NCBI RefSeq assembly: GCF_963676685.1
Contig: NC_092344.1
Span: 29,946,001 to 30,010,000, forward strand
Source: Mytilus edulis
Taxonomy: Eukaryota
DNA: 64,000 nucleotides
Direction: 5' to 3'
Below the pieces are notes generated by a model that did no database searches, had not been told where the DNA came from, and saw only the letters and a list, made by a program, of their open reading frames with translations. A program made the position numbers and the translations under genes. The first letter of the stretch is position 1. Each line of letters begins with the position of its first letter. Of this stretch, positions 5,701-62,394 are shown one piece after another.

Positions 5701-8700
5701 AAACTGATTCCCTGCTACTGATGTAAAGGAAACAGTTGAATTGATGTAATGGAGGTAGAAGGAAGTATAAAGAAGTTGTTGAACTCTGTCATTTACAGCT
5801 TAATCCAAAACCTTTTCCTCACAAATCCAATATCTGATTATCAACAGTAACAATCAATGTATTATTGATCACAAATATCTGTTTGAACCGACTGACACGG
5901 ATTCTTCATCAGTTAATAACTTCTGTACTAAAATAACCTATAAAGAGTTCTGAGTACCATTATACAGAAAAAGAACTTGATATCTCAGTAATTTGTATGG
6001 AGATTTGATTAGAAAACCAGTCTTTGGTCTTGTATCAATTTTGATGAATCTTTTGTCTTATTTCAGTCTTGCTTTCTGGTATATTATTCTGGGATGCTAA
6101 AAATATAGATGTAGGATATAGATTGCAAAATAATATATACAATATAATAATGAGTATGCTCTTTGTGAGCCCATTTAATGGAAATGAGAAATAACTTCCT
6201 TTTTCCTATCCAAATATCTTCCCTTTAATTTGTGCATAATGTATAACTGCCGATAAATCTAAAGTGACATTTGATGATTTAAATTGTAAATTCATGATTT
6301 TTTTTTTATTTAATTTTTTTTTTGGTCATGGAAATGCAACACTTTTGTGACTAATGAATGTTTTAACAAAAAGCCGTCCACCCAAGAGACAATTAGCAAA
6401 GATTTGGTGACAAAATCCATCTGCAACATGGTTATTATAGTCGTAGCCAGATAAATCTGCATTTCACTAAACACAAAACAGATGACTACATGAAATAAAT
6501 TATTCCAATGCAATTATTACATAACACCTCTCTGACCTAGTTTCCACTAAGTGACACTACATACTAACAGATTCCACACCCCTTTTCCTATAATTGATGA
6601 GAACTACACATTTATTTGACACAGTAATCAATAAGATGGCCTAATTAATGTATTGATTCTATATATAACTGACCAAAGTCCTGTGAGTCATACAAATCAA
6701 TATTAGAATGGAATTTCCTTTCTGATTCCAAATTTAAAACAGTTTTAGAAATTATTTATACCACCCCCTACCATGTTATAATTGTTAATTCAATCCACTT
6801 TAGATTCAATAATGTGATTAAATGATGATTGAGGAAAACAGAACTGGTGAAATACTAAATGAAGAGTGTTCAATACATCAGTCAATTTCTGAAACAGACA
6901 CTTTTAAAATAGAAGAAAGGAGAATAGGACAGTTTAACGAAAAGAAGAGAGAAAATGTCCAGGAGAAAGAGATAATATAAAGATATCCTTTGGATTATAT
7001 TCTTAGTGCATATCGCATATCGACAGCAACTTATCAAAGTTAAACCTCAGCATCAATACTCCAAAATTGACATAACAGAAGCTGGCAACTTGAACAAAAA
7101 AATTAATGATCTATTTTTTGCTATTCACAAAGACAGGTAAATTAATTAGCAGATAGAATCTGAGAGATAAGTACACAAGCTCAATCAAGTATGACATTAA
7201 GTATTCTGCCAGATCACATTATATAACGTCAGGACATTACCCTCCCAAAACCTATTGAATATTGTATGGTATACCATGCTGGGAAATAAACTTAATGTCT
7301 ATTCAAGCTAGACCTACTGACTGTCATTGAAAATCAATCAAAAATCTACTTTTCACCTCAAGAATCTAATTAGAAAGTTTAAGGTCGGTCAACTTTCCAC
7401 TACATCTATAATGATTTAATTCTATTATATAAAATACATCACGTAAGCACAGGTAACCAGGTCATTGGCCTCCAGAGTGAAAACTTCTGTTCAAACACCC
7501 CTCCCCCTTTTCCCTTCAGCTTATTGAATATGAAATAGATAAATATCGAAATAATACACATCAACTTCTAACTTTAGAGCATTTATTTCAAATGTATTTT
7601 TATTTTGAGGGATCACTTGGCTTTAAAGTTATTAAACCCAAAAAGATTTTTTTTTAGTATTTTTTTCCCCCCTTTATTCTCTCCCCTTTTCCTATTCGTA
7701 ATAAGGTCAATGTATATGTTTTTCCTTCCGATCAGTAACAAAAGTACAAGCAGCATTTTTGGCAGCCAGATATGTTTATATTTACCCTAGTAATAAATAA
7801 ACCATGCAGTATGACTATACATAGAATTACCTACTTTTATGATACCGCAAAGTGTTAAAATCGTTTCTTTTATTAGAACTTGTTATCATCAGCATCAAAA
7901 TATATTTGAACATTAAATATGTAACAAGTTTTAAGTATCAATAAATCTATGCAAATATTGTACATTTAACACTGATTTTAAACCACATAAATAAGACATT
8001 AATTTTTAATGTAGTTCTGGTAAAAATAAACCAAAGTTCACACAAATTTTTTTTAAATAAATTTAAATGCAATTTTAATTTAGCAAACTGATGGGATTTA
8101 AGTTACAGCATAGGACAAACATATAATAAATTTAATTTAAATTTGTTTTATAACATAAATGCATTTTCGATAGACATCAGTAGTTTTACTTTTAATCTAA
8201 AAATACTTATGGTATATTGCCCCCAGTTAATCATAAATCTTTGGCTTTTTTACTTTTTAGGCTATAAAAAATTTGAAGAAGTTATAACAAGCCTGACACA
8301 AAAATTCTTTCCTACATCGATGAATTTGTATAAAAATATGACAAGAAATTTAAAACCTAGCTACCATACTAATTTGCATAAATTTACCATTTCTACAAAA
8401 TATATATGATTTGATTCACTTAATGTATATTTTTGATAGATTACTTGTAATGAACGAAATTTTAATGTTCCCCCCTCAGGAGGGATTAGTGAAGCTGAAC
8501 TAATCTAGGTCAAGACAATCATCAGTGTAGGCATTCCAGGTCAGTAGTTCAACCTCATTAAATCAATCACCTATAAAAGGCCTTTACAGGGGTAGAAATA
8601 CCAGGTCATTCTGGTTTATGGCATAGCTATAGGAAAGAAAAATTAACAGCTAGAAGAATGAACAATACAAGTGTGAACACATTTCTAGTAGATCTGATTG

Positions 8701-8983
8701 TTCAGTTTCTTAGTAGGTGACAAAACCACGCATTCAACAAATCTATTTTTGAGTGTAAATTTCATTATACAAAAATCAGTTATAAGTATAGCATTGGTCT
8801 TTTGTGATTAAAATAAATATGTCAATGATTAATGGTGTCAGCAGATGTGATACCATGTAGGTGTGTCATAAATAACCTACTCCTATAATCAAACTCAAAA
8901 GCATTTTTTTTCTGTGCATGTGACTAAAAGTCTTATAAACTTTTGATATTAAAGTAGAAATTTCACAACTACATGTACTGATA

Positions 8984-9310
8984 AACTAGAGGCTCCAAAG
9001 ACCCTGTGTCACTCACCTTGGTCTTAGTAAAGATTCAACAAAGAATATTCTCTTACATTGTATAACTCTGTCATCTGACAGTTTTTAACTGTTTTGACGG
9101 ACAAGAAGAGGAGCTCAACAGTGTTAACATTTTTGCAGATGTCCGAATTTCTCTTTTGATAACAGTTTTCAAAATAATAGACAAAACTTGCAATTTGCAC
9201 CTTTGTTCTATGTTTAGCCATGTCAACCATCTTGAATGGCAGGCGAGGTCATTGGATACATTTTTTAAACTAGATACTCTAATAATGATTGTGGCCAAGT
9301 TTGATTTGAT
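8984..9310 (+). mobile_element. Degenerate HINE-like element 5' part (AACTAGAGGCTC family); related remnants at ~22312-22800 and ~17830-17960
   Basis: AACTAGAGGCTCCAAAGACCCTGTGTCACTCACCTTGG start, recognised from memory as a common bivalve repeat head. Confidence 0.45.
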
Positions 9311-9558
9311 CTTTCTGTGAACACAATTTATCTTTCTGTGAACACACAATTTATCTTTTCAGTGAAAACACAGTTAATCGATATGTGAACACACAACAAC
9401 CAATATGTACTGGTTAATCTCATTTGTAGACCTGTCTCCATAACTTATCAAGTTGACTTTTGTTCCTGCAAAATTCTTTAATGATTTCAAACTTCTCTGT
9501 CAACTCAATTAGTATGGGCTATTTTTGGTTAAGATTGTATCTATCTATAAATAGTTAC

Positions 9559-9693
9559 CCCTAATTTTTCCGGATCCATATTTTTAATATCTTTGCCATT
9601 GATTTGATTGTCTTTAAACATCTGAGCATATCTGTAGAGTCTGACACAGGCCATCCATTCTACAACGTTTTCACAAGTCCAATTCTCTATAGG
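9559..9693 (-). CDS. PIK3R1: Coding exon, 135 nt, phase 0-0: PIENWTCENVVEWMACVRLYRYAQMFKDNQINGKDIKNMDPEKLG; N-terminal two-thirds of a SAM domain
   Basis: TATTTCTATTTTTAG acceptor, GGG|GTAACT donor; SAM consensus W-x4-V-x2-W-M-x4-L-x2-Y-x3-F-x4-I-x-G. Confidence 0.92.
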
Positions 9694-13600: not shown

Positions 13601-13704
13601 CACATAAGTACTGTGTACTGGAGTACTGGGCGCTGGATTTCCTCTGGTACAACTGGATTGGACTTCTACATCCCAACATGAAGCATGGCATACTTGGTTA
13701 CATC
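13601..13704 (-). CDS. PIK3R1: Coding exon, 104 nt, phase 1-0: (G)CNQVCHASCWDVEVQSSCTRGNPAPSTPVHSTYV; end of C1 domain + linker
   Basis: TTTTTCCTTATTTTCTAG acceptor, GTG|GTATGT donor; locally GC-richer; supplies C-X4-H-X2-C-X8-C. Confidence 0.92.
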
Positions 13705-22929: not shown

Positions 22930-22977
22930 CTGTACACCTTTTGCCAACTTTACCAGTACCCCATATGAAATCATTAC
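22930..22977 (-). CDS. PIK3R1: Coding exon, 48 nt, phase 1-1: (C)NDFIWGTGKVGKRCT(G); middle of C1 domain
   Basis: TTTTTTCTTTTCTTTCAG acceptor, CAG|GTATGT donor; FIWG..K.G..C is the typical C1 core. Confidence 0.92.
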
Positions 22978-32381: not shown

Positions 32382-34849
32382 GATCCCCCCCCCCCCCTTT
32401 TTATTTAATTAAGTAACTGATGGACTCTGCAATACAGATTTTATTAAAACTGCTGCAAACTACATAAAACTTTTTCCTATCAATTAAATAATAGAGTTTT
32501 CTTTTTTAATTTGTCCTATTTTGAGCATTGATATTTTTTGTACTGTTAGTAAAGTAAAATAAGAATAAAAAGACAAAATTGGGTAGATATGAATATTTAG
32601 ACAGCAACCCAAAGACACTAAATAAAACAACAGATATCTGGGATTCCCAACATATATATATTTGTTTAATATATATGTTTCCTCTGATAACTATATATAA
32701 TACTGCATTTGACCTGATTTTAATCTACCCATATATGAGCCACAGATATTTTTAGTCAAAGTTCAGGGTAAGTAAACAATTCAATCTAAATTTAGGTAAA
32801 ACACATCTATTTTAAATTTGACAAGACACATATAGATATAGGGTAATCTATGTATAAGACTAGAGTGTGTATGCACCTATAGTTGTTAATGTCTGTGTCA
32901 TTTTGGTCTTTTGTGGATAGTTGTCTCATTGGCAATCATACCACATCTTCTTTTTTATATGATTACTTCAAATAAGCTTGTATCAATAATACAATTCATT
33001 CCCCAAGCAGAGAACACGTCCCTACTTATATGCTTGACAAAACTTATACAATATACCTCAGAAAAAGATGTCAAGTGTTAATACTTTCCAGCTCTACTTA
33101 GAATAGCCATGACACGTAACAAGGTTGTTACCCAGAGGACCCTCATAACTAACAGATAACATATTGGCACAGCAAACAAATCAGGTCTACATACATTACA
33201 TAAAAAATGTAGTAGATTTTTACAAAAGGGGCATAACTCCTGGAAGCAACAAGTGTAAGTGATAACAAGTGAATTATTTGCTCTAAATAAATGAAGATGG
33301 CATACATTTTTGATGAACTCCAAATAGAAAAACCTGTTGAGTAGACTTTGACCTATAATGGTTTACTTTTACAAATTGTGACTTGGATGGAGATTTGTCT
33401 CACTGGCACTCATACCACATCTTCTTCACGTTTCTTTACATGTTTTCCCTATGTAAAATCATTTGAACAAAGACACTGCTACACCAATAATGCATGATAT
33501 TATACAGGCACCTAAAGTGTCCAATGATGATAGACCACCTTCCTCATTTCATTTTAACATTATGGAGTGAATACATGGAGCCAAATAAGACCTTTAAACT
33601 GCACATATTTCTTTACCCAATAACTTTCAATTTCTAACATCTTACAGAGTACTTAATTTCCCAGCCTCTTGCTCCCCTTAAAAGAAACTAAAAGTTTAAG
33701 ATAAAAAAGACAATTTTTAAAATTACAAATTACTCACTGTTCGAACATTATCACAGAATCTAAGCAATCACTGTTGGTAGGTTTCTCCAGTTGATCAATT
33801 GATGGACTAAATATTAAACAGACAAGCAAAATCAGGCTGCTTTTCTCTGATCAGCTGTTTCTTAGGGTTCAAAGACTATTTCATATAACAATAGTAACCC
33901 CTGAGTTTCAATCTTAGAATGTAATTATGAATCCTTGATTTTTTTTCTTCAAATTAATTGATAAAGTGATCAAAATACCTGTAGAAAATCTTTTTATGTC
34001 ATTACTGTCCAATATCTGGCACAACAGAAGGTCAGAAACTGTTGACAGATAACAGGTACATTGGTACTGGTTTTATAACCAGTTTCCAAATTGTGCATGC
34101 AATTGAATTACAGTGAGTGGTACAAGAAGTGGAAGCTACAGTGAATAACCCTTTCAAATAAAAATTAGACAAAAGGTTTTACAATACCACCCGTAGCATA
34201 GTCATCATGAACATGATAATATAAAAACCTGATTTTCAATTTTACAACTTCAGAACAAATTTAGTATATAGAATTTGGCATTCTTGTTTAATGAAACACA
34301 CCATTAATTTTCAAACCTTTTTCTTTACCTTTAGGTCTACTTTTATAGTATTCATTAAAAAGACCTTAACAATACAGAATTAAATATAGACTATATTTTA
34401 TATTTAGACTGCAAATGTCCAATATTGGGTTCTAAAATCAGCTGATTTGCATGGTCAAGGTCAACCATTGGAATTTTCTACAATAAAATCATGAGATACA
34501 AGAATGGTATTATACCATTATTATCCAGTATTTCATTTTAGCTCAAGTGTGCTTCTTGACTTCTAAGACAATAGAAATCCTCTTGCTAGACTACTTGAAT
34601 GAGTGTTTGTCCATTAATAATTTGCATAGCATTCCACTAAGACTTAAGACAATATTAGCATTTCACATTCAGTGTTATCTTACCTTGTCATATTTCTTAT
34701 TGAACTCAAGTGAGATGCTGTATCAGCTGATTCTCACGTGAGGGAAACTAGCATGTAGATCAGCAAATTCTTACTTTTACTTTCAGCAGTATTTCTTTGG
34801 TATAAATTTATCAATTTTTATGTCTATAAAAGGGACATTACTCCAGAAC

Positions 34850-35411
34850 AGTAAAATAGATGCAAACCTGAATCTCCAACCTGATATGGGTTTTGTGGTA
34901 ACAAGCATTAATTTGTGCATAACTTTTATTATATTTGGTTGAGGCAAACTTAAGTAAGAGAACAGTAACAAAAATTTCAGCGGTAAAAATGACAACACCC
35001 AATTTTGAACTTGATCTGTGTTTTGTGGTGATAAGCATTGTGTATGAATTTTATAACATTTGGTTGAGTCAAACTAAAGTTACAGAAAGGAAACCAATTT
35101 TGGGGACATAATGGATGGACGGGATGGGGTAACATTTTGTCTGTGTCATGCAGTTTTAAGCATTGTGTAAGAGTTTCATAAAATTTGGGTGGAGAAAACT
35201 AAAGTTATAACTACTAGTGCAGAAAGACATTTTATAAAGGGTCATAACTCTGGAACATTAAGTGACTGGTATCACTAATTCGACCTGTCTGCAAGTTTTG
35301 GTTTTAAGCATTGCGTATGAGTTTCTTAAAATTTGGATGAGGCAATTTCTAAGTTAGATTTTAGAAATGATAATGTGAATGCCCATGTTGCCCACAGAGG
35401 GGGTATAAAAA
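34850..35411 (+). mobile_element. HINE-like element remnant with internal repeats, ~95 bp downstream of the 84-nt exon donor
   Basis: Four copies of aagcatt..t..ata.atttggttgaggcaaact; GGAT/GGAC tract; ends GGGGGTATAAAAA. Confidence 0.55.
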
Positions 35412-35504
35412 CAGGGACTTTTTTATTAACACACATAATATGTTTGGTGGATTGATATAATGATTTCAGATGTCCACACTTTTGAATGTTTATTTAATAC
35501 TCAC

Positions 35505-35588
35505 AAAATGAACAGGTAACTGGTCTGACAAAATAACAATCTACTAGACGATGAGGAAGGGGCACAACTGGTGGTGGTGGTACTGGCT
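35505..35588 (-). CDS. PIK3R1: Coding exon, 84 nt, phase 1-1: (E/K)PVPPPPVVPLPHRLVDCYFVRPVTCSF(C); Pro-rich motif + first part of C1 domain
   Basis: Minus strand: CTTAAC branch point, TTGTTTTATTTTTACAG acceptor, GTGAGT donor; joins in frame to 22977-22930 to make CSFC. Confidence 0.9.
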
Positions 35589-38500
35589 CTGTAAAAATAA
35601 AACAATTCATGTTAAGTTACTGAGGAAATAACAATCTACTAGACGATGAGGAAGGGGCCACAACTAGTGGAGGTGGTACTGGCTCTGTAAAAATAAAACA
35701 ATGAATGTTAAGTTACTGAGGAAATAACAATCTACTAGACGATGAGGAAGGGCCACAACTGGTGGTGGTGGTACTGGCTCTGTAAAAATAAAACAATTCA
35801 TGTTAAGTTACTGAGGAAATAACAATCTACTAGACGATGAGGAAGGGGCCACAACTAGTGGAGGTGGTACTGGCTCTGTAAAAATAAAACAATGAATGTT
35901 AAGTTACTGAGGAAATAACAATCTACTAGACGATGAGGAAAGGGCCACAACTGGTGGTGGTGGTACTGGCTCTGTAAAAATAAAACAATTCATGTTAAGT
36001 TACTGAGGAAATAACAATCTACTAGACGATGAGGAAGGGGCCACAACTGGTGGAGGTGGTACTGGCTCTGTAAAATAAAACAATTCATGTTAAGTTACTG
36101 AGGAAATAACAATCTACTAGACGATGAGGAAGGGGCACAACTAGTGGTGGTGGTACTGGCTCTGTAAAAATAAAACAATGCATGTTAAGTTACTGAGGAA
36201 ATAACAATCTACTAGACGATGAGGAAGGGGCACAACTGGTGGAGGTGGTACTGGCTCTGTAAAAATAAAACAATGCATGTTAAGTTACTGAGGAAATAAC
36301 AATCTACTAGACGATGAGGAAGGGGCACAACTGGTGGTGGTGGTACTGGCTCTGTAAAAATAAAACAATTCATGTTAAGTTACTGAGGAAATAACAATCT
36401 ACTAGACGATGAGGAAGGGGCACAACTGGTGGAGGTGGTACTGGCTCTGTAAAAATAAAACAATTCATGTTAAGTTACTGAGGAAATAACAATCTACTAG
36501 ACGATGAGGAAAGGGCCACAACTGGTGGAGGTGGTACTGGCTCTGTAAAAATAAAACAATGAATGTTAAGTTACTGAGGAAATAACAATCTACTAGACGA
36601 TGAGGAAAGGGCCACAACTGGTGGAGGTGGTACTGGCTCTGTAAAAATAAAACAATGAATGTTAAGTTACTGAGGAAATAACAATCTACTAGACAATGAG
36701 GAAGGGGCACAACTGGTGGAGGTGGTACTGGCTCTGTAAAAATAAAACAATGAATGTTAAGTTACTGAGGAAATAACAATCTACTAGACAATGAGGAAGG
36801 GGCACAACTGGTGGAGGTGGTACTGGCTCTGTAAAAATAAAACAATGAATGTTAAGTTACTGAGGAAATAACAATCTACTAGACGATGAGGAAGGGGCAC
36901 AACTGGTGGTGGTGGTACTGGCTCTGTAAAAATAAAACAATTCATGTTAAGTTACTGAGGAAATAACAATCTACTAGACGATGAGGAAGGGGAACAACTG
37001 GTGGTGGTGGTACTGGCTCTGTAAAAATAAAACAATGCATGTTAAGTTACTGAGGAAATAACAATCTACTAGACGATGAGGAAGGGGAACAACTGGTGGT
37101 GGTGGTACTGGCTCTGTAAAAATAAAACAATGCATGTTAAGTTACAGAGGAAATAACAATCTACTAGACGATGAGGAAGGGGCACAACTGGTGGTGGTGG
37201 TACTGGCTCTGTAAAAATAAAACAATGCATGTTAAGTTACTGAGGAAATAACAATCTACTAGACGATGAGGAAAGGGCCACAACTGGTGGAGGTGGTACT
37301 GGCTCTGTAAAAATAAAACAATTCATGTTAAGTTACAGAGGAAATAACAATCTACTAGACGATGAGGAAGGGCCACAACTGGTGGTGGTGGTACTGGCTC
37401 TGTAAAAATAAAACAATTCATGTTAAGTTACAGAGGAAATAACAATCTACTAGACTATGAGGAAGGGGAACAACTGGTGGTGGTGGTACTGGCTCTGTAA
37501 AAATAAAACAATTCATGTTAAGTTACAGAGGAAATAACAATCTACTAGACGATGAGGAAGGGGAACAACTGGTGGTGGTGGTACTGGCTCTGTAAAAATA
37601 AAACAATTCATGTTAAGTTACTGAGGAAATAACAATCTACTAGACAATGAGGAAGGGGAACAACTGGTGGAGGTGGTACTGGCTCTGTAAAAATAAAACA
37701 ATTCATGTTAAGTTACAGAGGAAATAACAATCTACTAGACGATGAGGAAGGGGAACAACTGGTGGAGGTGGTACTGGCTCTGTAAAAATAAAACAATGCA
37801 TGTTAAGTTACTGAGGAAATAACAATCTACTAGACGATGAGGAAGGGGAACAACTGGTGGTGGTGGTACTGGCTCTGTAAAAATAAAACAATGCATGTTA
37901 AGTTACAGAGGAAATAACAATCTACTAGACGATGAGGAAGGGGAACAACTGGTGGTGGTGGTACTGGCTCTGTAAAAATAAAACAATTCATGTTAAGTTA
38001 CTGAGGAAATAACAATCTACTAGACGATGAGGAAGGGGCCACAACTGGTGGTGGTGGTACTGGCTCTGTAAAAATAAAACAATTCATGTTAAGTTACTGA
38101 GGAAATAACAATCTACTAGACGATGAGGAAGGGGCACAACTGGTGGTGGTGGTACTGGCTCTGTAAAAATAAAACAATTCATGTTAAGTTACAGAGGAAA
38201 TAACAATCTACTAGACGATGAGGAAGGGGAACAACTGGTGGTGGTGGTACTGGCTCTGTAAAAATAAAACAATGCATGTTAAGTTACTGAGGAAATAACA
38301 ATCTACTAGACGATGAGGAAGGGGAACAACTGGTGGTGGTGGTACTGGCTCTGTAAAAATAAAACAATGCATGTTAAGTTACTGAGGAAATAACAATCTA
38401 CTAGACGATGAGGAAGGGGCACAACTGGTGGTGGTGGTACTGGCTCTGTAAAAATAAAACAATTCATGTTAAGTTACTGAGGAAATAACAATCTACTAGA

Positions 38501-41500
38501 CGATGAGGAAAGGGCCACAACTGGTGGTGGTGGTACTGGCTCTGTAAAAATAAAACAATGAATGTTAAGTTACTGAGGAAATAACAATCTACTAGACGAT
38601 GAGGAAGGGGCACAACTGGTGGTGGTGGTACTGGCTCTGTAAAAATAAAACAATTCATGTTAAGTTACTGAGGAAATAACAATCTACTAGACGATGAGGA
38701 AGGGGAACAACTGGTGGAGGTGGTACTGGCTCTGTAAAAATAAAACAATTCATGTTAAGTTACTGAGGAAATAACAATCTACTAGACGATGAGGAAGGGG
38801 AACAACTGGTGGTGGTGGTACTGGCTCTGTAAAAATAAAACAATTCATGTTAAGTTACTGAGGAAATAACAATCTACTAGACGATGAGGAAGGGGAACAA
38901 CTGGTGGTGGTGGTACTGGCTCTGTAAAAATAAAACAATTCATGTTAAGTTACTGAGGAAATAACAATCTACAAGACGATGAGGAAGGGGCACAACTGGT
39001 GGTGGTGGTACTGGCTCTGTAAAAATAAAACAATGAATGTTAAGTTACTGAGGAAATAACAATCTACTAGACGATGAGGAAGGGGCACAACTGGTGGTGG
39101 TGGTACTGGCTCTGTAAAAATAAAACAATTCATGTTAAGTTACTGAGGAAATAACAATCTACTAGACGATGAGGAAGGGGCACAACTGGTGGAGGTGGTA
39201 TTGGCTCTGTAAAAATAAAACAATTCATGTTAAGTTACTGAGGAAATAACAATCTACTAGACGATGAGGAAGGGGCACAACTGGTGGAGGTGGTATTGGC
39301 TCTGTAAAAATAAAACAATTCATGTTAAGTTACTGAGGAAATAACAATCTACTAGACGATGAGGAAGGGGCCACAACTGGTGGTGGTGGTACTGGCTCTG
39401 TAAAAATAAAACAATTCATGTTAAGTTACTGAGGAAATAACAATCTACTAGACGATGAGGAAGGGGCCACAACTGGTGGAGGTGGTATTGGCTCTGTAAA
39501 AATAAAACAATTCATGTTAAGTTACTGAGGAAATAACAATCTACTAGACGATGAGGAAGGGGCCACAACTGGTGGAGGTGGTATTGGCTCTGTAAAAATA
39601 AAACAATTCATGTTAAGTTACTGAGGAAATAACAATCTACTAGACGATGAGGAAGGGTCCACAACTGGTGGTGGTGGTACTGGCTCTGTAAAAATAAAAC
39701 AATTCATGTTAAGTTACTGAGGAAATAACAATCTACCAGACAATGAGGAAGGGGCACAACTGGTGGTGGTGGTACTGGCTCTGTAAAAATAAAACAATTC
39801 ATGTTAAGTTACTGAGGAAATAACAATCTACTAGACGATGAGGAAGGGGCCACAACTGGTGGAGGTGGTATTGGCTCTGTAAAAATAAAACAATACATGT
39901 TAAGTTACTGAGGAAATAACAATCTACTAGACGATGAGGAAGGGGAACAACTGGTGGTGGTGGTACTGGCTCTGTAAAAATAAAACAATGCATGTTAAGT
40001 TACTGACAAAATAACAATCTACTAGACGATGAGGAAGGGGCACAACTAGTGGAGGTGGTACTGGCTCTGTAAAAATAAAACAATTCATGTTAAGTTACTG
40101 AGGAAATAACAATCTACTAGACAATGAGGAAGGGGCACAACTGGTGGTGGTGTTACTGGCTCTGTAAAAATAAAACAATTCATGTTAAGTTTCTGACAAA
40201 ATAACAATCTACTAGACGATGAGGAAGGGGCACAACTAGTGGAGGTGGTACTGGCTCTGTAAAAATAAAACAATTCATGTTAAGTTACTGAGGAAATAAC
40301 AATCTACTGGACGATGAGGAAGTGGCCACAACTGGTGGTGGTGGTACTGGCTCTGTAAAAATAAAACAATTCATGTTAAGTTACTGAGGAAATAACAATC
40401 TACTAGACGATGAGGAAGGGGAACAACTGGTAGAGGTGGTACTGGCTCTGTAAAAATAAAACAATGCATGTTAAGTTACTGAGGAAATACCAATCTACTA
40501 GACAATGAGAAAGGGCACAACTGGTGGTGGTGGTACTGGCTCTGTAAAAATAAAACAATTCATGTTAAGTCACTGAGGAAATAACAATCTACTAGACGAT
40601 GAGGAAGGGGAATAACTGGTGGAGGTGGTACTGGCTCTGTAAAAATAAAACAATGCATGTTAAGTTACTGAGGAAATAACAATCTACTAGACAATGAGGA
40701 AGGGGAACAACTGGTGGAGGTGGTACTGGCTCTGTAAAAATAAAACAATGCATGTTAAGTTACTGAGGAAATAACAATCTACTAGACGATGAGGAAGGGG
40801 CACAACTGGTGGAGGTGGTACTGGCTCTGTAAAAATAAAACAATTCATGTTAAGTTACTGAGGAAATAACAATCTACTAGACAATGAGGAAGGGGAACAA
40901 CTGGTGGAGGTGGTACTGGCTCTGTAAAAATAAAACAATTCATGTTAAGTTACTGAGGAAATAACAATCTACTAGACGATGAGGAAGGGGAACAACTGGT
41001 GGAGGTGGTACTGGCTCTGTAAAAATAAAACAATTCATGTTAAGTTACTGAGGAAATAACAATCTACTAGACAATGAGGAAGGGGAACAACTGGTGGAGG
41101 TGGTACTGGCTCTGTAAAAATAAAACAATTCATGTTAAGTTACTGAGGAAATAACAATCTACTAGACAATGAGGAAGGGGAACAACTGGTGGAGGTGGTA
41201 CTGGCTCTGTAAAAATAAAACAATGCATGTTAAGTTACTGAGGAAATAACAATCTACTAGACAATGAGGAAGGGGAACAACTGGTGGTGGCGGTACTGGC
41301 TCTGTAAAAATAAAACAATTCATGTTAAGTTACTGAGGAAATAACAATCTACTAGACGATGAGGAAGGGGCCACAACTGGTGGAGGTGGTATTGGCTCTG
41401 TAAAAATAAAACAATTCATGTTAAGTTACTGAGGAAATAACAATCTACTAGACGATGAGGAAGGGTCCACAACTGGTGGTGGTGGTACTGGCTCTGTAAA

Positions 41501-44208
41501 AATAAAACAATTCATGTTAAGTTACTGAGGAAATAACAATCTACCAGACGATGAGGAAGGGGCACAACTGGTGGTGGTGGTACTGGCTCTGTAAAAATAA
41601 AACAATTCATGTTAAGTTACTGAGGAAATAACAATCTACTAGACGATGAGGAAGGGGCCACAACTGGTGGAGGTGGTATTGGCTCTGTAAAAATAAAACA
41701 ATTCATGTTAAGTTACTGAGGAAATAACAATCTACTAGACGATGAGGAAGGGGCCACAACTGGTGGAGGTGGTATTGGCTCTGTAAAAATAAAACAATTC
41801 ATGTTAAGTTACTGAGGAAATAACAATCTACTAGACGATGAGGAAGGGTCCACAACTGGTGGTGGTGGTACTGGCTCTGTAAAAATAAAACAATTCATGT
41901 TAAGTTACTGAGGAAATAACAATCTACCAGACGATGAGGAAGGGGCACAACTGGTGGTGGTGGTACTGGCTCTGTAAAAATAAAACAATTCATGTTAAGT
42001 TACTGAGGAAATAACAATCTACTAGACGATGAGGAAGGGGCCACAACTGGTGGAGGTGGTATTGGCTCTGTAAAAATAAAACAATACATGTTAAGTTACT
42101 GAGGAAATAACAATCTACTAGACAATGAGGAAGGGGAACAACTGGTGGTGGTGGTACTGGCTCTGTAAAAATAAAACAATTCATGTTAAGTTACTGACAA
42201 AATAACAATCTACTAGACGATGAGGAAGGGGCACAACTAGTGGAGGTGGTACTGGCTCTGTAAAAATAAAACAATTCATGTTAAGTTACTGAGGAAATAA
42301 CAATCTACTGGATGATGAGGAAGTGGCCACAACTGGTGGTGGTGGTACTGGCTCTGTAAAAATAAAACAATTCATGTTAAGTTACTGAGGAAATAACAAT
42401 CTACTAGACGATGAGGAAGGGGAACAACTGGTAGAGGTGGTACTGGCTCTGTAAAAATAAAACAATGCATGTTAAGTTACTGAGGAAATAACAATCTACT
42501 AGACAATGAGAAAGGGCACAACTGGTGGTGGTGGTACTGGCTCTGTAAAAATAAAACAATTCATGTTAAGTCACTGAGGAAATAACAATCTACTAGACGA
42601 TGAGGAAGGGGAACAACTGGTGGAGGTGGTACTGGCTCTGTAAAAATAAAACAATGCATGTTAAGTTACTGACAAAATAACAATCTACTGGACGATGAGG
42701 AAGGGGAACAACTGGTGGAGGTGGTACTGGCTCTGTAAAAATAAAACAATGCATGTTAAGTTACTGAGGAAATAACAATCTACTAGACAATGAGGAAGGG
42801 GAACAACTGGTGGAGGTGGTACTGGCTCTGTAAAAATAAAACAATGCATGTTAAGTTACTGAGGAAATAACAATCTACTAGACGATGAGGAAGGGGCACA
42901 ACTGGTGGAGGTGGTACTGGCTCTGTAAAAATAAAACAATTCATGTTAAGTTACTGAGGAAATAACAATCTACTAGACAATGAGGAAGGGGAACAACTGG
43001 TGGAGGTGGTACTGGCTCTGTAAAAATAAAACAATTCATGTTAAGTTACTGAGGAAATAACAATCTACTAGACGATGAGGAAGGGGAACAACTGGTGGAG
43101 GTGGTACTGGCTCTGTAAAAATAAAACAATTCATGTTAAGTTACTGAGGAAATAACAATCTACTAGACAATGAGGAAGGGGAACAACTGGTGGAGGTGGT
43201 ACTGGCTCTGTAAAAATAAAACAATTCATGTTAAGTTACTGAGGAAATAACAATCTACTAGACAATGAGGAAGGGGAACAACTGGTGGAGGTGGTACTGG
43301 CTCTGTAAAAATAAAACAATGCATGTTAAGTTACTGAGGAAATAACAATCTACTAGACAATGAGGAAGGGGAACAACTGGTGGAGGTGGTACTGGCTCTG
43401 TAAAAATAAAACAATGCATGTTAAGTTACTGAGGAAATAACAATCTACTAGACGATGAGGAAGGGGAACAACTGGTGGAGGTGGTATTGGCTCTGTAAAA
43501 ATAAAACAATTCATGTTAAGTTACTGAGGAAATAACAATCTACTAGACGATGAGGAAGGGTCCACAACTGGTGGTGGTGGTACTGGCTCTGTAAAAATAA
43601 AACAATTCATGTTAAGTTACTGAGGAAATAACAATCTACTAGACGATGAGGAAGGGGCCACAACTGGTGGAGGTGGTACTGGCTCTGTAAAAATAAAACA
43701 ATTCATGTTAAGTTACTGAGGAAATAACAATCTACTAGACGATGAGGAAGGGGAACAACTGGTGGTGGTGGTATTGGCTCTGTAAAAATAAAACAATGAA
43801 TGTTAAATTACTGAGGAAATAACAATCTACTAGACGATGAGGAAGGGGCACAACTGGTGGTGGTGGTACTGGCTCTGTAAAAATAAAACAATTCATGTTA
43901 AGTTACTGAGGAAATAACAATCTACTAGACGATGAGGAAGGGGCCACAACTGGTGGTGGTGGTACTGGCTCTGTAAAAATAAAACAATGAATGTTAAGTT
44001 ACTGAGGAAAAACAATCTACTAGACGATGAGGAAGGGGCCACAACTGGTGGTGGTGGTACTGGCTCTGTAAAAATAAAACAATTCATGTTAAGTTACTGA
44101 GGAAATAACAATCTACTAGACGATGAGGAAGGGGCCACAACTGGTGGTGGTGGTACTGGCTCTGTAAAAATAAAACAATTCATGTTAAGTTACTGAGGAA
44201 AAACAATC
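35527..44208 (-). repeat. 95/96-bp tandem array (~91 units) derived from the 3' splice site and 5' part of the 84-nt exon
   Basis: Unit (+): gaggaaataacaatctactagacgatgaggaaggggcacaactggtggtggtggtactggctctgtaaaaataaaacaattcatgttaagttact. First acceptor at 35589, last at 44162: 8573 bp, about 90 intervals. Confidence 0.98.
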
Positions 44209-47200
44209 AACAACAGGTTTAAGAAGTGACTGCAACAGTGGTGTTCATGCAAGCTCTGTAAAAATAAGACAACTGCTGTTAAAGTTATTGACAATATTAT
44301 AACAATATTGTCAACAATGAGCAAAATCTCAACTGTATAGTAAGCTAAAAAGGCCTTTCATGACAAAATGAGAAAACAAACATACAAAACATTTATGAAA
44401 GACAGCTAAATAAATAAAGCAATGACATCCACTGAATTACAGGCTCTTAACTTTGGACATGCATTGCACAAAATGAGGCTGGGTTAAATATGTTTATAAC
44501 TATTACTGTTCTACCAGATGTGGCCTTGGAAACAGAAGTACTTTATATATATATGTATGCCAATAAATTGCTAGATAGCAATCCTTAACGTAACCCAATA
44601 AGTATTTTTTTAACTACTAAATATTTTTGATGAAGTCTTAAATAATCATTAATTCAGTGGGTAGATTGGTACAGCCATATTGTGGCCAATCATTATGATC
44701 AAGGGTACACAGTACTGAGTCTGTTTACCTATAACCTGTCCTTCAAGGATACCACACCTCATTAACTTACGTAAACCTAATTAACCCCTGACAGAAGACA
44801 TTAAACAAGCTCATACAACATATATATAAAATACAATTTAAAGGTTTAACTCTTTGATACTTATTCTAGAAATAGCTCCAGTGGCTGAAAATATAACAGT
44901 TCATGATGAACAGATGGCCCAGAACATGAAAATGTTACTTAGGATACTAAATCTAATATCGGTACATCAAAGTGGATACTTTTTTTATATAATAAGATAT
45001 CTGCAAAAGACTGTAATATGTATCTACTAGACAATTATCATTATAAGTACAATTTTGTCTACATAACATGAAAGTCATAATCCATGAAATTAGGGGCAAA
45101 ATATCTAATAACCCTTGTTTTGTTTGGTTGCTTCAGTGCAAAATAAGTGAAAGGAAACAAAACCCCAAGATACTCATACAAGAGGACAGTATATTTCATT
45201 TTCACAAATCACCAAAATTAATTTTGAAACCCAGTACAAAAAGACTGTAATTCTATGTTCTTTTATGTGCTACTTTTCCAAAACAGATTACATAAAATAG
45301 AAAAGGACTTTAAAATACCAGACTTTTCTTATCAATAATTAAATTTTGTGTATCATTATATCATCTATAATATAAAATGTATATATATCATTATTATTAG
45401 ATATATCCCAGCTTGCAGTATAACAATTAACAGATGAACTCACTGACACAGTGACCTACTGACATAATTGAAGATACACTTATAATTATACCACTATCAA
45501 GATAATAAAAATACCATAAACTTGATAGGAAGTTTAATTGGTTAAATCATTTAACATAGGATGTCTTGATAGAAAATTTATCTATAAAATGTCTTACTGT
45601 TGTAAAAGAATATCGATCAAATCCCAGATATATATGATTCATACAATGAAATCTTACATTTTAATGGAATCAGTAAAATACCTATCGATAGAAAACGTTA
45701 TGATATGTTTTAAAATATAAGGATTTCTGACTTTTAAAGGATCTGTTTACCAGGTTTTTAAGTATAACAACAGTATAAGAATCTACATTCTCAGAAAAAT
45801 ATAATTTTACAAAATATAATTTTCCTAACAAAAAAGAATTTAATTGGAATATTTCAATCTATAAATTAGCATTTTGATAATAAGCCTTTAGGTATTGCAT
45901 TACTTGACACAATTACTTAGACATTTAAACCTTTTGTTTCTTCCTATGGTTGCATAACACAAAAAAAATCATTACAATTTATTTTTCATGGTACCTTGTA
46001 GAATATACATATGTCGACTAAAAATAGATTACTTCCACTAAAATTTAACTTATTACAAAACAGATTATGCTGTATGGGCTTTGTTCATTGTTGAAGGCTG
46101 TACAGAGACATAACACTAAACAGATTTTATTGGTCTCTTGTGAAGAGATGTCTCATTAGCAATCCTTACCGCATCTTCTTTTTTATATTTAGTAATAGTT
46201 TCACATGTTTCCAAATCTATATTTCAGTAACTAACAAATTATTTCAGTCAACTTTTACACTTTCTGTCCGTAAGAACTATATCAACTCCAAAAAACTTTT
46301 TTGCTGGTGACTCACTATCAAGTGCAACAACTTGTTGTTAATGGTTTCTTTATTAGATATATTTGTATGCTTGTTTATTTTTAAGTCAGTTGTGTTGTCT
46401 GAAATGTATATTTACATAGTTTTTGTTGCTGGATCCCAATTATTGTCGCAGAACCTATCATGTCTGTTTGGGTAATTAATTGCTCATACAATATTTTGTC
46501 AATTGAACCAACAAGTGGTAGGTTCATCTAGATTATAAAACCTAATTTAGGTTTAACCCACTGTTTTCTTTTTGTAAAATGCCTGTACCAAGTCAGGAAT
46601 ATGACAGACATTTTCCATTCTTTCCAAATTGGTTGATATAAGTCTCACATTTGTTTTTGTCAGATTTTAATTGGACTTTCTCTTTTTGAATTTACTGTAA
46701 TCTAAGTTCTATATTTTTGTTAATGTTTTTTTAAGACTTCCCCTTTCAGAATAAACTGTAGATGTAGAATTCAATATTTTTGTTAATGTTTTGTTAGTAT
46801 TGTTTATATTCTGGTCATATTATCTACAGAGGGTCTCCTACATTTACAATAAGAAGATTAGAGTTTTATATTAGATCTACATATGTTCATCTGTAATTAC
46901 ATGTAGCCTACTTATTCCTCACCCAGAGAACTAAATCTGTGCTGATATTTTTACAATTATACAACTTTAATTACAGTCATATAAAGTTCAAATACAAAAT
47001 TACAGTAGGCAATGTAATATATATCCTGTATAGTTAAAGTTGACAAAAACTAGGATATAATAATATTACAGTCAACTCAAGTTCAATGGGTTGTTTTTAT
47101 TTTGTTGGAGTGTCTCAATGCAGACGAAAATAAAAAGTTGGCTAAAAATACACTAGACAATTGTTTCATTACTGAGGCAAAATTATCAAAAATCATCTTA

Positions 47201-49246: not shown

Positions 49247-50575
49247 TTTATCTTACTTATACTCTGGTATCCATGATCAGCTGATCAACCAAAGTTTATC
49301 TTACTTATACTCTGGTATCCATGATCAGCTGATCAACCAAAGTTTATCTTACTTCGTTATACTCTGGTATCCATGATCAGCTGATCAACCAAAGTTTATC
49401 TTACTTATACTCTGGTATCCATGATCAGCTGACCAACCAAAGTTTATCTTACTTCGTTATACTCTGGTATCCATGATCAGCTGATCAACCAAAGTTTATC
49501 TTACTTATACTCTGGTATCCATGATCAGCTGATCAACCAAAGTTTATCTTACTTATACTCTGGTATCCATGATCAGCTGACCAACCAAAGTTTATCTTAC
49601 TTATACTCTGGTATCCATGATCAGCTGATCAACCAAAGTTTATCTTACTTATACTCTGGTATCCATGATCGGCTAATCAACCAAAGTTTATCTTACTTCG
49701 TTATACTCTGGTATCCATGATCAGCTGATCAACCAAAGTTTATCTTACTTATAATCTGGTATCCATGATCAGCTGATCAACCAAAGTTTATCTTACTTAT
49801 ACTCTGGTATCCATGATCAGCTGATCAACCAAAGTTTATCTTACTTATACTCTGGTATCCATGATCAGCTGATCAACCAAAGTTTATCTTACTTATACTC
49901 TGGTATCCATGATCAGCTGATCAACCAAAGTTTATCTTACTTCGTTATACTCTGGTATCCATGATCAGCTGATCAACCAAAGTTTATCTTACTTATACTC
50001 TGGTATCCATGATCAGCTGACCAACCAAAGTTTATCTTACTTCGTTATACTCTGGTATCCATGATCAGCTGATCAACCAAAGTTTATCTTACTTATACTC
50101 TGGTATCCATGATCAGCTGATCAACCAAAGTTTATCTTAACTTATACTCTGGTATCCATAATCAGCTGATCAACCAAAGTTTAACTTACTTCGTTATACT
50201 CTGGTATCCATGATCAGCTGATCAACCAAAGTTTATCTTACTTCGTTATACTCTGGTATCCATGATCAGCTGATCAACCAAAGTTTATCTTACTTATACT
50301 CTGGTATCCATGATCAGCTGATCAACCAAAGTTTATCTTACTTATACTCTGGTATCCATGATCAGCTGATCAACCAAAGTTTATCTTACTTATACTCTGG
50401 TATCCATGATCAGCTGACCAACCTAAGTTTATCTTACTTATACTCTGGTATCCATGATCAGCTGATCAACCAAAGTTTATCTTACTTCGTTATACTCTGG
50501 TATCCATGATCAGCTGATCAACCAAAGTTTATCTTACTTATACTCTGGTATCCATGATCAGCTGATCAACCAAAG
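49247..50575. repeat. 48/52-bp minisatellite (~27 units) with a perfect 14-bp palindrome TGATCAGCTGATCA
   Basis: Unit tttatcttactt(cgtt)atactctggtatccatgatcagctgatcaaccaaag; measured spacings 48 and 52. Confidence 0.97.
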
Positions 50576-60382: not shown

Positions 60383-61569
60383 CAAATAAGATGCAAATAT
60401 TATGGACATATCCTGACGATCGTTGGGTGTCTGAGAAATAAACTAATATCATAATATATCAATCAAGTATAAAATGTAGGTCAAGGTATCTCATATTGCA
60501 TATCAATGTTGTACTATACAAGAAAACTGTTATTGTGGATTATCATCAATACCTTATCATACTTAAAATAATCTGGCGTCAGTAAAGATATACAAAGGTT
60601 TATCAACCTTATTCTATATACTCCAGTCACATACTGGACAGTAACAGAACGCGATTCAAGTCAATTCAGGAGGTCAGGATAGGGAAAAAGGTCAAGATGA
60701 TGTCAAATTTGTAATTCTGTACATATTTCACATATCAAATAGCGGAACTTATCACAGACTTTTACCATTTTTTTTACTACGTTTTTTTTCAGGCTATATA
60801 AGTCAGATGGCAGATTTCTCATTTAACCAATAACATATACATATATATCATTAATTGCCTACATTCTAATAACAAAGCTATAGGCACCACCCTATCTATC
60901 ATACAATACAAAAGAAAATAGATGTAGCTTAACGACTTCTTTCAGGTGAGACAGTTTAACAATGAACTTTTGAAATCATACATATGTTGGGAGTTACTCA
61001 GAAGTTAAAACCATAACAGTCAAAAACTTGCCTTTAAAATAAGTGGTGAAGTCCTTCACCTGGTTCCTTGCATAAAGATTTGTGGAGCCAGCGTGACATT
61101 TATTTTGATGCACCTGAAAGCATTTTTCTCTAACGAGAGGTACTGCAAGGTATTTACTGCATAATGTATTCCAAAACATGACAATGACAGATCACCATCA
61201 TGGTAAAAATAGAGTTATCTATCTTTAAAAAACATCAAAACTGATATACTTCTACACAAAATTAGGAAAATTTAAATTTTTGGCGGGAAGGGGTTATAAT
61301 AAATAGCAATATACCATTATCACTTTTCAAATGAATAAATGTTTTTTCATTAAAAAAATTAATATTAAAACTAAATCATTAAGATTTGTGCTTCAATTTG
61401 CCCTAAATAGCTATTTTTAAAATATATCTTCATTTGCATTTTCTAGCATTACATCTCAAATAACAGCTTGGTTGCTCTTAAAACAAAGTTACACAGATCT
61501 AATTTTCAGATTAATTCATCTAGCATCAATTCTGTGCAATTGAAATTCTTATAATAAACAAAAATGAAG

Positions 61570-61971
61570 TGTCCACAGTACACCATGCCTGGCTCAAACT
61601 AACTCTGTCCATAGGACACCATGCCTGGCTTACACTATCAATGTCCACAGGACACCATGCCTGGCTCACTCTTTCACTGTCCACAGGACACCATGCCTGG
61701 CTCAAACTAACACTGTCCATAGAACACCATGCCTGGCTCACACTATCACTGTCCACCATGCCTGGCTCACTCTTTCACTGTCCACAGGACACCATGCCTG
61801 GCTCAAACTAACTCTGTCCATAGAACACCATGCCTGGCTCACACTATCACTGTCCACAGGACACCATGTCTGGCTATCACTGTCCACCATGCCTGGCTCA
61901 CACTGTCACTGTCTGTCATGCCTGGCTCACACTATCAAAGTCCACCATACCTGGCTCACACTATCACTGTT
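61570..61971. repeat. ~29-37-bp minisatellite (~12 units)
   Basis: gtcca(caggaca)ccatgcctggctcacactatcact repeated; explains the overlapping repetitive ORFs. Confidence 0.9.
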
Positions 61972-62394
61972 CATTGATTTAAGAAATTGTGGACAAAATC
62001 TGTATTTGGCAAATAAATTAAACAGTTACAGCATAATGGTACAAAACATTAACTTGAGGGACCAGAAATCTTAATGCCCCTCCTACTACCATAAGCATAT
62101 TTATGTTAATTAATGATGTTAAATATGAAAATTAGACCTACAGTAACTTGAAAACTAGTCATAGGAGCTGGACTTATTTTCATATATGTAGTGAATGATT
62201 GCAAATGAGCCAACTCCAAAATAGACCAAATGAGGTAGCAGTGAAAAATAACAACTTAAGGTCACATTACCGCCTTCAACAAATGAACAAAACCCAGACC
62301 ATAGTAAGATATAAAGCAAATCTTAGACAAAATAAAGTTCACAGCATAGCCTTCTCAAGTGAATATGTTTTTTCTCAGTGGAGTAGATTGATTG

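What the first reader, a model, noticed from the sequence alone, without database searches (positions are those of the whole stretch)
35505..44208. 8.7-kb satellite made from a coding exon's own 3' splice site: ~90 decoy acceptors precede the real C1 exon
Seen: on the gene's strand each unit is GTAACTTAACATGAATTGTTTTATTTTTACAG|AGCCAGTACCACCACCACCAGTTGTGCCCCTTCCTCATCGTCTAGTAGATTGTTATTTCCTCA. That is the branch point, pyrimidine tract, AG and first ~60 nt of the real exon. Only the last-transcribed unit (35588-35505) continues into VRPVTCSF and the strong GTGAGT donor. The spliceosome therefore meets ~90 essentially identical acceptors first. Inference: correct mRNA must rely on exon definition by the distal donor. 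The array could act as a U2/U2AF sink or as a copy-number-dependent tuner of this PI3K regulatory subunit. For example, using the penultimate acceptor with the real donor gives 84+95 nt, a frameshift.
Basis: partly seen in the sequence, partly recalled or inferred. Interest (0 to 1): 0.88.

Follow-up and report, generated by a model that had tools for sequence, protein, structure and literature searches.

The report
Intron array of 91 copied splice acceptors
An intron of a PI3-kinase regulatory-subunit gene holds about 91 tandem copies of the next exon's own splice acceptor plus its first 60 bases, yet assembled transcripts use only the last, genuine acceptor, so it is a natural test case for splice-site choice and has no demonstrated function.

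Summary
A 95/96-nt unit is repeated about 91 times at 35531-44208. On the minus strand each unit carries a branch-like TTAAC, a pyrimidine tract, AG, and the first ~57-63 nt of exon 35588-35505.

The exon is real. Together with two further exons (22977-22930 and 13704-13601) it encodes a complete C1 domain. A SAM exon follows, then RhoGAP, SH2, iSH2 and SH2 exons, which is the p85-like PI3K regulatory subunit architecture.

RNA contigs from two studies join 35505 to 22977. One of them leaves the genome exactly at the true acceptor and runs into non-array sequence. An independent DNA data set gives about 83-fold k-mer depth on the acceptor core, so the array is not an assembly artefact. The unit occurs nowhere else in the 1.37-Gb genome.

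The functional ideas (U2AF sink, copy-number tuner) remain untested. No decoy use was seen, but only contigs covered the site.

The closest known case is the human F7 intron-7 minisatellite of pseudo-donors.

The scan read this same stretch once more (s1-834705). It also noted similar arrays at two other loci of this genome; I did not check those.

The parts
35531..44208 (-). Tandem array of 95/96-nt units, about 91 copies. On the transcribed strand each unit is a 32-nt spacer (GTAACT..TTAAC..pyrimidine tract..ACAG) followed by a 62-64-nt copy of the exon's start.
   Evidence: TRF; unit splitting and variant table; found only at this locus in the genome; about 83-fold k-mer depth in an independent DNA run
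44209..44325 (-). Eroded upstream edge of the array: about 1.4 diverged units, the full one 67% identical to the core. It still carries ..TTATTTTTACAG|AGC and ..CCTCA|GTAACT.
   Evidence: Sequence; local alignment to the consensus scores 49 against a shuffle maximum of 28; identity 0.67
35589..35620 (-). Authentic 3' splice-site module of exon A: branch-like TTAAC at 35615-35611, pyrimidine tract, AG at 35590-35589. It is identical to the decoy modules.
   Evidence: Sequence; an RNA contig stops matching the genome at 35589
35505..35588 (-). Exon A, 84 nt, phase 1 at both ends. It encodes PVPPPPVVPLPHRLVDCYFVRPVTCSF, a Pro-rich linker plus the first third of a C1 domain (H-x12-C-x2-). The first ~57 nt are shared with every unit.
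   Evidence: Translation; alignment to orthologues P0032, P0080 and P0112; RNA contigs of X1 and X3 cover it and splice out of it
35499..35504 (-). Authentic donor TTT|GTGAGT of exon A
   Evidence: Sequence. Contigs of X1 and X3 leave the genome at 35503. The 30 reported letters next to that point equal exon B from its third base (22975 downwards). The two bases in between (GT) fit both the intron start at 35504-35503 and the start of exon B at 22977-22976.
22930..22977 (-). Exon B, 48 nt, encoding (C)NDFIWGTGKVGKRCT(G), the middle of the C1 domain
   Evidence: Only hit of a phase- and motif-constrained search; identical to the loose end of the RNA contigs; tblastn to orthologues
13601..13704 (-). 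Exon C, 104 nt, encoding CNQVCHASCWDVEVQSSC..., the end of the C1 domain and a linker
   Evidence: Sequence and phases
9559..9693 (-). SAM-domain exon, 135 nt; its inferred donor is GGG|GTAACT
   Evidence: Pfam SAM_2, E 9.6e-9; 45-58% identity to p85-like orthologues; splice contexts

Best explanation
This is an intronic minisatellite. It arose when a ~95-nt segment spanning the 3' splice site of a coding exon was duplicated in tandem. The segment held 32 nt of intron (branch site, pyrimidine tract, AG) and the first 63 nt of the exon that starts the first C1 domain of a p85-like PI3K regulatory subunit. Unequal exchange then expanded and homogenised it to about 91 copies, including one block duplication of about 22 units. 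The whole array lies inside one intron of at least 8.7 kb and is removed with that intron. The dominant mRNA joins an upstream exon, not yet located, to the last acceptor at 35588. The inferred reasons are these. Only the last copy is followed by the complete 84-nt exon and a GTGAGT donor. Each decoy is followed after 63 nt by TCA|GTAACT, whose position overlaps the next unit's branch site: the branch A lies 9 nt from the pseudo-donor and the spacer is only 32 nt. U1 and U2 therefore cannot both sit on one spacer, and adjacent units cannot be spliced to each other. Any decoy acceptor used with read-through to the real donor meets an in-frame stop and should be removed by nonsense-mediated decay. 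The array is most likely a tolerated, neutral or slightly costly structural feature and not a regulator. Shown here: the anatomy, the gene identity, use of the real exon and acceptor, and the copy number. Inferred: why the last site wins, and neutrality.
For: The copying went from exon to array: the copied part holds the HRLVDCYF start of a C1 domain that is conserved in orthologues from bee, crinoid, gastropod and octopus. The gene model rests on exons A, B and C giving H-x12-C-x2-C-x12-C-x2-C-x4-H-x2-C-x8-C with matching phases. A SAM exon follows, and RhoGAP, SH2, iSH2 and SH2 exons lie further down the same strand. RNA evidence: the 651-nt X1 contig matches the stretch only at 35503-35589. 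Its downstream loose end equals exon B. It has 169 nt more beyond the laid piece at 35589, and no piece or joint places them on the array units in the stretch. The X3 contig shows the same A-to-B join. No joints were reported among units. DNA evidence: the X16 flank contig 35053-35560 has depth 11.1, against 925 for the acceptor-core unitig. The unit occurs only at this locus. All 91 decoys give a stop within 2-56 codons. The eroded edge units and the block duplication fit growth by unequal exchange. There is no special RNA structure, z = -1.28.
Against: The pseudo-donor hexamer GTAACT is the same one inferred for the genuine donor of the SAM exon, so the decoy 'exons' are not obviously undefinable. 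Sixty-one of them are 63 nt, open and frame-preserving. The pyrimidine tract plus AG core is markedly less variable than the rest of the unit: 1 of 23 columns against 31 of 74, post hoc Fisher p = 0.0007. That could reflect constraint, though homogenisation could also produce it. Only assembled contigs covered the exon, and contigs drop rare isoforms. The one raw RNA run had no reads on it. The upstream exon was not located. The scan notes similar arrays at two other loci of this genome (unchecked), so some systematic process may be involved.
Confidence: 0.7

Rival explanations
1. The array is a functional decoy array. The ~91 competent 3' splice-site modules bind U2AF/U2, or pyrimidine-tract proteins, on the nascent intron. 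They slow or divert splicing, some of it into stop-containing products, so that array length tunes the output of this PI3K regulatory subunit.
For: Nearly all units keep a complete branch/pyrimidine tract/AG module, and this core is the least variable part of the unit. Every decoy leads to a premature stop. Array sequence is present in RNA-run contigs at collapsed depth 4-6. Intronic repeat length is known to alter splicing in ABCA7 (PMC5954066).
Against: No decoy junction was seen. The array depth in RNA runs corresponds to about 0.05 per copy, under 1% of the exon depth, which is what ordinary pre-mRNA or trace DNA would give. Homogenisation explains the uniformity without selection. The gene is expressed at a low level, so a cell-wide sink effect is implausible. 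Similar arrays are reported at unrelated genes (unchecked), which argues for a mutational process and against gene-specific design.
Confidence: 0.12
2. The array is a variable cassette-exon array (scan note s1-834705). Each unit would be a 63-nt frame-preserving exon plus a 32-nt GT-AG spacer, and different numbers of Pro-rich half-C1 cassettes would be spliced into the protein.
For: Sixty-one units have 63-nt open pseudo-exons flanked by AG and GTAACT. GTAACT appears to work as a donor elsewhere in this gene.
Against: A 32-nt spacer with the branch A 9 nt from the donor cannot be spliced between neighbouring units. Twenty-six units are 64 nt and shift the frame, and 3 carry stops. No joints were found in RNA contigs of two studies, and the contig that crosses the true acceptor continues into non-array sequence. 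A repeated half C1 domain would lack its zinc ligands.
Confidence: 0.03
3. The array is an assembly artefact or has an inflated copy number. The real locus would hold one or a few units.
For: Long near-identical arrays are hard to assemble, and no long read spanning the array was examined.
Against: In a DNA run from another study and under another organism label, the acceptor-core unitig has depth 925 against 11.1 for the adjoining single-copy flank, about 83-fold. One contig runs from the flank through exon A into the shared part. The 50 distinct unit variants and the ordered block duplication look like a real array.
Confidence: 0.03
4. The array consists of alternative first exons. Each unit carries an in-frame ATG (MNCFIFTEPVPPPP...) 21 nt upstream of the 'acceptor'. 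Transcription could start inside the array and read straight into exon A without splicing at 35588.
For: An in-frame ATG with an open frame is present in most units (and the sequence). Some orthologue models begin only 6 residues before the C1 histidine (P0032).
Against: The RNA contig leaves the genome exactly at the AG, at 35589/35588. The sequence between the ATG and the exon is a textbook pyrimidine tract.
Confidence: 0.03

Closest known systems
Human F7 intron-7 37-bp minisatellite (Borensztajn et al. 2006, PMC1557585)
   Same: It is a tandem array inside an intron in which one unit spans the authentic exon-intron junction, so the real splice site has neighbours of identical sequence. Physiologically only the copy that adjoins the exon body is used. 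Here too only the exon-adjacent copy is seen in mRNA.
   Different: F7 repeats the donor, with 5-9 pseudo-sites downstream of the real one. Here the acceptor is repeated, with branch site, pyrimidine tract and about 60 nt of exon, about 91 times upstream of the real one. The decoys are therefore transcribed first, up to 8.7 kb ahead. A 5'-to-3' scanning rule, which explains F7, would predict the wrong site here. No experiments exist for this locus.
ABCA7 intron-18 25-bp VNTR (De Roeck et al. 2018, PMC5954066)
   Same: It is an intronic tandem repeat whose units begin with a splice-donor dinucleotide. A single unit can be retained through a cryptic site, and repeat length correlates with altered splicing.
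   Different: The ABCA7 unit is not a copy of an exon boundary with a full 3' splice-site module, and its effect on splicing was measured. Here no effect has been measured.
Tandem exon duplication and mutually exclusive exon clusters (e.g. Dscam1; my own knowledge, not checked here)
   Same: Both arise by tandem duplication of a segment that includes exon sequence and a splice site.
   Different: Those units are whole exons with spliceable introns, and they appear in mRNA. Here the unit lacks the last 21 nt of the exon and its donor, the spacer is 32 nt, and no unit was seen in RNA contigs.
Repeat-rich RNAs that recruit many copies of a splicing regulator (Yap et al. 2018, PMC6224606, title and abstract only; that the protein is PTBP1 is from my own knowledge)
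   Same: A transcript with many pyrimidine-rich repeats could in principle act as a multivalent binding platform. The unit here is 62% pyrimidine.
   Different: That RNA is an abundant, stable non-coding transcript. Here the repeats sit in an intron of a gene expressed at a low level, and the RNA does not accumulate.

Membership tests
Minisatellite spanning an exon-intron junction (F7 IVS7 type) | Head-to-tail array inside an intron, abutting the exon | tested here: met
   TRF gives 35531-44208, 91.1 copies. All 91 spacings are 94-96 nt, with no interruption.
Minisatellite spanning an exon-intron junction (F7 IVS7 type) | The exon-adjacent unit holds the authentic splice junction, and the other units carry pseudo-sites of the same sequence | tested here: met
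   The 18-nt acceptor context is identical in 90 of 92 units. The terminal unit equals the consensus up to exon position ~57.
Minisatellite spanning an exon-intron junction (F7 IVS7 type) | Only the site next to the exon body is used in mRNA | tested here: met
   Contigs of two RNA studies use exon 35588-35505, and one of them crosses the true acceptor into non-array sequence. No joints among units were reported. Caveat: contigs cannot exclude rare isoforms.
Minisatellite spanning an exon-intron junction (F7 IVS7 type) | Copy number varies among individuals (VNTR) | tested here: inconclusive
   The assembly holds 91 units. The depth ratio in another data set is about 83, which is too rough to show a difference.
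Tandemly duplicated alternative exons (cassette or mutually exclusive) | Each unit is a whole exon with both splice sites and an intron long enough to splice | tested here: not met
   The spacer is 32 nt and the branch-like A lies 9 nt from the pseudo-donor. The unit lacks the exon's last 21 nt.
Tandemly duplicated alternative exons (cassette or mutually exclusive) | Units appear in mature transcripts | tested here: not met
   No joints were seen in X1 or X3 contigs, and the raw RNA run had no coverage.
Recursive (ratchet) splice sites | Acceptor AG immediately followed by a donor GT | tested here: not met
   Every unit reads ..TTTTTACAG|AGCC.
p85-type PI3K regulatory subunit | SH2, inter-SH2 and SH2 core | tested here: met
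   Orthologues found through the SAM exon carry SH2 x2 and PI3K_P85_iSH2. Their SH2, iSH2 and cSH2 parts map exon by exon to the same strand of the same contig downstream of the window (E down to 3e-40).
p85-type PI3K regulatory subunit | Invertebrate N-terminal extension C1-SAM-(C1)-RhoGAP | tested here: met
   The first C1 comes from exons A, B and C, the SAM exon, and RhoGAP exons. The second C1 was not looked for.
Dispersed satellite or transposon-borne repeat | Copies at many loci in the genome | tested here: not met
   All 38 matches of a 4-unit probe fall within this one locus of the 1.37-Gb genome (the tool warns that very common words are skipped).

The most novel reading that the evidence does not exclude
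Arrays made of an exon's own splice site may be a recurrent class in this genome: this locus, plus two further loci noted by the scan and unchecked. At least here, the array might act as a length-dependent brake on splicing. Nascent decoy acceptors would engage U2AF/U2 or pyrimidine-tract proteins and delay or divert commitment to the real exon, so that array length sets the dose of the PI3K regulatory subunit.
Probability: 0.1. Interest if true: 0.85.

Novelty: new variant of a known kind. Interest (0 to 1): 0.55.

Why it matters
How the spliceosome chooses among equivalent sites is still debated; the candidates are scanning, first-come-first-served during transcription, and exon definition. 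This locus offers about 91 sequence-identical, apparently complete acceptor modules that are transcribed before the real one, in a conserved signalling gene, and the real one still wins. It mirrors the F7 pseudo-donor model with ten times as many sites, and a simple 5'-to-3' rule fails for it. It is directly usable for minigene and long-read tests. If array length varies among individuals, it also becomes a natural dose series. If it proves inert, it shows how much splice-site clutter an intron can carry without harm.

Tried and rejected
- **Pfam on the 27-aa exon A translation:** no hit, because it is too short. The exon was identified through phases, the C1 pattern and orthologues.
- **Regex for a one-exon second half of the C1 domain:** nothing found. 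The domain turned out to be split over three exons.
- **Raw RNA run X24:** 12.4 million reads were read. Five were laid, all on a dispersed repeat at 35004-35105 and none on the exon. There are therefore no junction counts.
- **Upstream exon:** tblastn of 36 long orthologue proteins against the window found exons A, B and SAM but nothing upstream of the array. Whole-genome mapping of P0099 and P0080 found no N-terminal exon either. The 169-nt upstream part of the X1 contig was not printed by the tool.
- **Second half of the SAM domain:** not found within 1-9558 by motif search.
- **RNA secondary structure masking the decoys:** three units fold no better than shuffles, z = -1.28.
- **Alternative start codon inside the unit:** rejected, because the contig leaves the genome at the AG.
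- **Recursive splicing:** rejected, because no GT follows the AG.
- **Variable-column test, spacer against exon-like part:** not significant, p = 0.11. The low variability of the pyrimidine tract plus AG core (p = 0.0007) is post hoc.
Exons were searched one by one, by reference.
Full report
**1. The observation**

Tandem Repeats Finder reports a single array at 35531-44208 with period 95, 91.1 copies and 96% matches. The array also shows up as a block of higher G+C and strong strand skew. I read the minus strand and split it on the acceptor motif. That gives 92 units with spacings of 95 nt (61 times), 96 nt (26 times) and 94 nt (4 times), with nothing inserted between them.

It is a 32-nt spacer, GTAACTTAACATGAATTGTTTTATTTTTACAG, followed by 63 nt beginning AGCCAGTACC.

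- The 18-nt acceptor context is identical in 90 of 92 units.
- Of the 91 units that precede the real exon, 90 keep a TTAAC branch-like motif whose A lies 23 nt before the AG.
- 89 keep the whole pyrimidine tract plus AG.
- 90 have no other AG between the branch-like motif and the acceptor.

The last unit matches the consensus up to about exon position 57. Only this unit continues as ...TTGTCAGACCAGTTACCTGTTCATTTT|GTGAGT. A probe of four units finds matches only at this locus in the 1.37-Gb genome.

**2. The exon and the gene**

Exon A (35588-35505) reads PVPPPPVVPLPHRLVDCYFVRPVTCSF and ends with one base of a codon. That is the H-x12-C-x2- start of a C1 domain.

I ran a search constrained by phase and by the C1 cysteine pattern between exon A and a downstream exon that holds the end of a C1 domain (13704-13601, CNQVCHASCWDVEVQSSC). 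It returned exactly one candidate: 22977-22930, encoding (C)NDFIWGTGKVGKRCT(G), with a good pyrimidine tract and a GTATGT donor. The three pieces have matching phases and together give a full C1 pattern.

The next exon (9693-9559) is a SAM domain (Pfam SAM_2, E 9.6e-9). Searching that exon alone against 1.84 billion proteins found long proteins with the architecture (SH3)-C1-SAM-C1-RhoGAP-SH2-iSH2-SH2. Several are named 'phosphatidylinositol 3-kinase regulatory subunit alpha(-like)' by their sources; the mollusc ones are unnamed. Their first C1 domain aligns with exons A and B, for example HVLVDVYFLTPILCKHCEDYVWGTGKVGVKC in P0080.

Mapping P0099 and P0080 on the window's own genome places RhoGAP, nSH2 (E 3e-40), iSH2 and cSH2 exons on the same strand of the same contig, 26-34 kb downstream of the SAM exon.

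The part of the unit that is copied contains the conserved HRLVDCYF, so the array was made from the exon and not the reverse.

I searched the exons one by one by reference. I did not build or search a joined spliced model.

**3. RNA and DNA evidence (stretch 34800-35810)**

*RNA contigs.* A 651-nt contig of run X1 matches the stretch only at 35503-35589. On the downstream side it carries loose letters, of which 30 were printed. Reverse-complemented, they equal exon B from its third base. That string occurs once in the window, at 22975. The two bases in between (GT) fit both the intron start and the start of exon B. A contig of X3, from another study, shows the same join.

On the upstream side the X1 contig has 169 more bases. 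The transcript therefore enters exon A through the true acceptor, from sequence that is not array. Because the array has no interruptions, the upstream exon must lie beyond 44325, and the whole array is intronic.

The spliced contigs also show that these 'RNA?' runs really are RNA.

*Array sequence in RNA runs.* Short 125-nt contigs that cross an unspliced acceptor are present at collapsed depth 4-6. Spread over about 91 copies, that is about 0.05 per copy, under 1% of the exon depth (6.6-11). Ordinary pre-mRNA or a trace of DNA would give this.

*Raw RNA run X24.* It had no read on the exon, so I have no junction counts.

*DNA.* Run X16 comes from another study and carries another organism label. 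One contig runs from the unique flank through exon A into the shared part (35053-35560) at depth 11.1. The unitig over the invariant acceptor core has depth 925, about 83-fold. The array is real and has roughly the assembled size.

**4. History of the array**

- The upstream edge (44325-44209) holds about 1.4 eroded units. The full one is 67% identical to the core and still has acceptor-like and donor-like ends.
- The core averages 95.8% pairwise identity, with 50 distinct unit sequences.
- There is a clear duplicated block at an offset of 22-23 units, about 2.1 kb.
- Four interior units carry the real exon's TTGTCA instead of the common TCCTCA at the unit's end.

All of this fits birth by a tandem duplication with break points at intron -32 and exon +63, then growth and homogenisation by unequal exchange, with old copies stranded at the far edge.

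**5. What decoy use would produce**

Any of the 91 decoy acceptors used with read-through to the real donor meets an in-frame stop within 2-56 codons. The penultimate unit is 96 nt, so that product would be 180 nt with a stop at codon 22.

Taken as stand-alone pseudo-exons (AG...|GTAACT), 61 units are 63 nt and open, 26 are 64 nt, and 3 are 62 nt with a stop. This is what scan note s1-834705 proposed. However, the spacer is 32 nt and the branch-like A is 9 nt from the pseudo-donor, so neighbouring units cannot be spliced to each other. No such joints were seen.

**6. How it most likely works**

*Shown:* the dominant transcript ignores about 91 sequence-identical acceptor modules that are transcribed first and uses the last one.

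*Inferred:* the last copy wins because it alone is followed by the complete exon and a GTGAGT donor (exon definition). In addition, U1 on a pseudo-donor and U2 on the branch site a few bases away exclude each other on the short spacer.

This inference has a weak point. GTAACT is also the inferred donor of the SAM exon of this same gene (GGG|GTAACT), so the pseudo-donor is not obviously dead.

RNA structure does not explain the choice (z = -1.28).

The pyrimidine tract plus AG core is the least variable part of the unit (1 of 23 variable columns against 31 of 74, p = 0.0007). That test is post hoc, and homogenisation could produce the same pattern.

Nothing here tests the 'sink' or 'tuner' ideas.

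**7. Comparison with what is known**

The nearest described case is the 37-bp minisatellite in intron 7 of human F7. Its first unit spans the exon-intron junction, so the real donor is followed by 5-9 identical pseudo-donors that stay silent (PMC1557585). Here the acceptor is repeated instead, with its branch site and 60 nt of exon, ten times as often and upstream of the real site. The 5'-to-3' scanning rule proposed for F7 would choose the wrong site here.

The ABCA7 intron-18 repeat shows that intronic repeat length can change splicing (PMC5954066). That effect was measured; here nothing has been measured.

This is not a cluster of alternative exons, not a recursive splice site, and not a dispersed satellite (see the membership table).

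The scan also holds unchecked notes of arrays made from an exon's own acceptor or donor at two other loci of this genome. If they are real, they point to a general mutational habit of this genome and away from gene-specific design.

**8. Verdict**

The structural reading is supported, and the functional reading is untested. The locus is a new variant of a known kind: a splice-junction minisatellite. It is of real use as a natural splice-site-choice experiment, and ordinary in the sense that no function is indicated.

Noticed in passing
window 34934-35105: This short stretch of the intron just downstream of exon A is a highly repeated dispersed element. In DNA run X16 its depth is about 6300 against 11 for the neighbouring single-copy sequence, and it is also abundant in the RNA runs. 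The only raw RNA reads laid on the stretch fell here.
   Followed up: no
window 49247-50575: A second tandem array lies upstream on the same strand side, with a 48-nt unit (TRF also reports periods 100 and 244) and 94-97% matches. Another first-stage note (s1-834970) reads it as AG-microexon-GT units. It lies about 5 kb upstream of the 95-nt array, possibly in the same intron.
   Followed up: no
window 9559 (donor of the SAM exon): The inferred donor of the SAM exon is GGG|GTAACT, a non-consensus hexamer (C at +5) identical to the pseudo-donor of every array unit. It is inferred from the reading frame and from homology, not confirmed by RNA.
   Followed up: partly
window 35547: The spliced X1 transcript contig carries G>A on the + strand, which is C>T at exon position 42 and gives CTA>TTA, Leu>Leu. 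This is a synonymous allele of the real exon.
   Followed up: no
window 61500-62000: ORFs on both strands show a repetitive peptide pattern (..SQAWCPVDS.. and ..HHAWLTLSLS..), which indicates another short tandem repeat.
   Followed up: no
same genome, other pieces (scan notes s1-836526, s1-835467): First-stage notes describe a PSMA4 intron with about 25 copies of the next exon's acceptor, and an exon flanked by arrays of its own acceptor (x17) and donor (x14). If these are real, splice-junction minisatellites recur in this genome.
   Followed up: no
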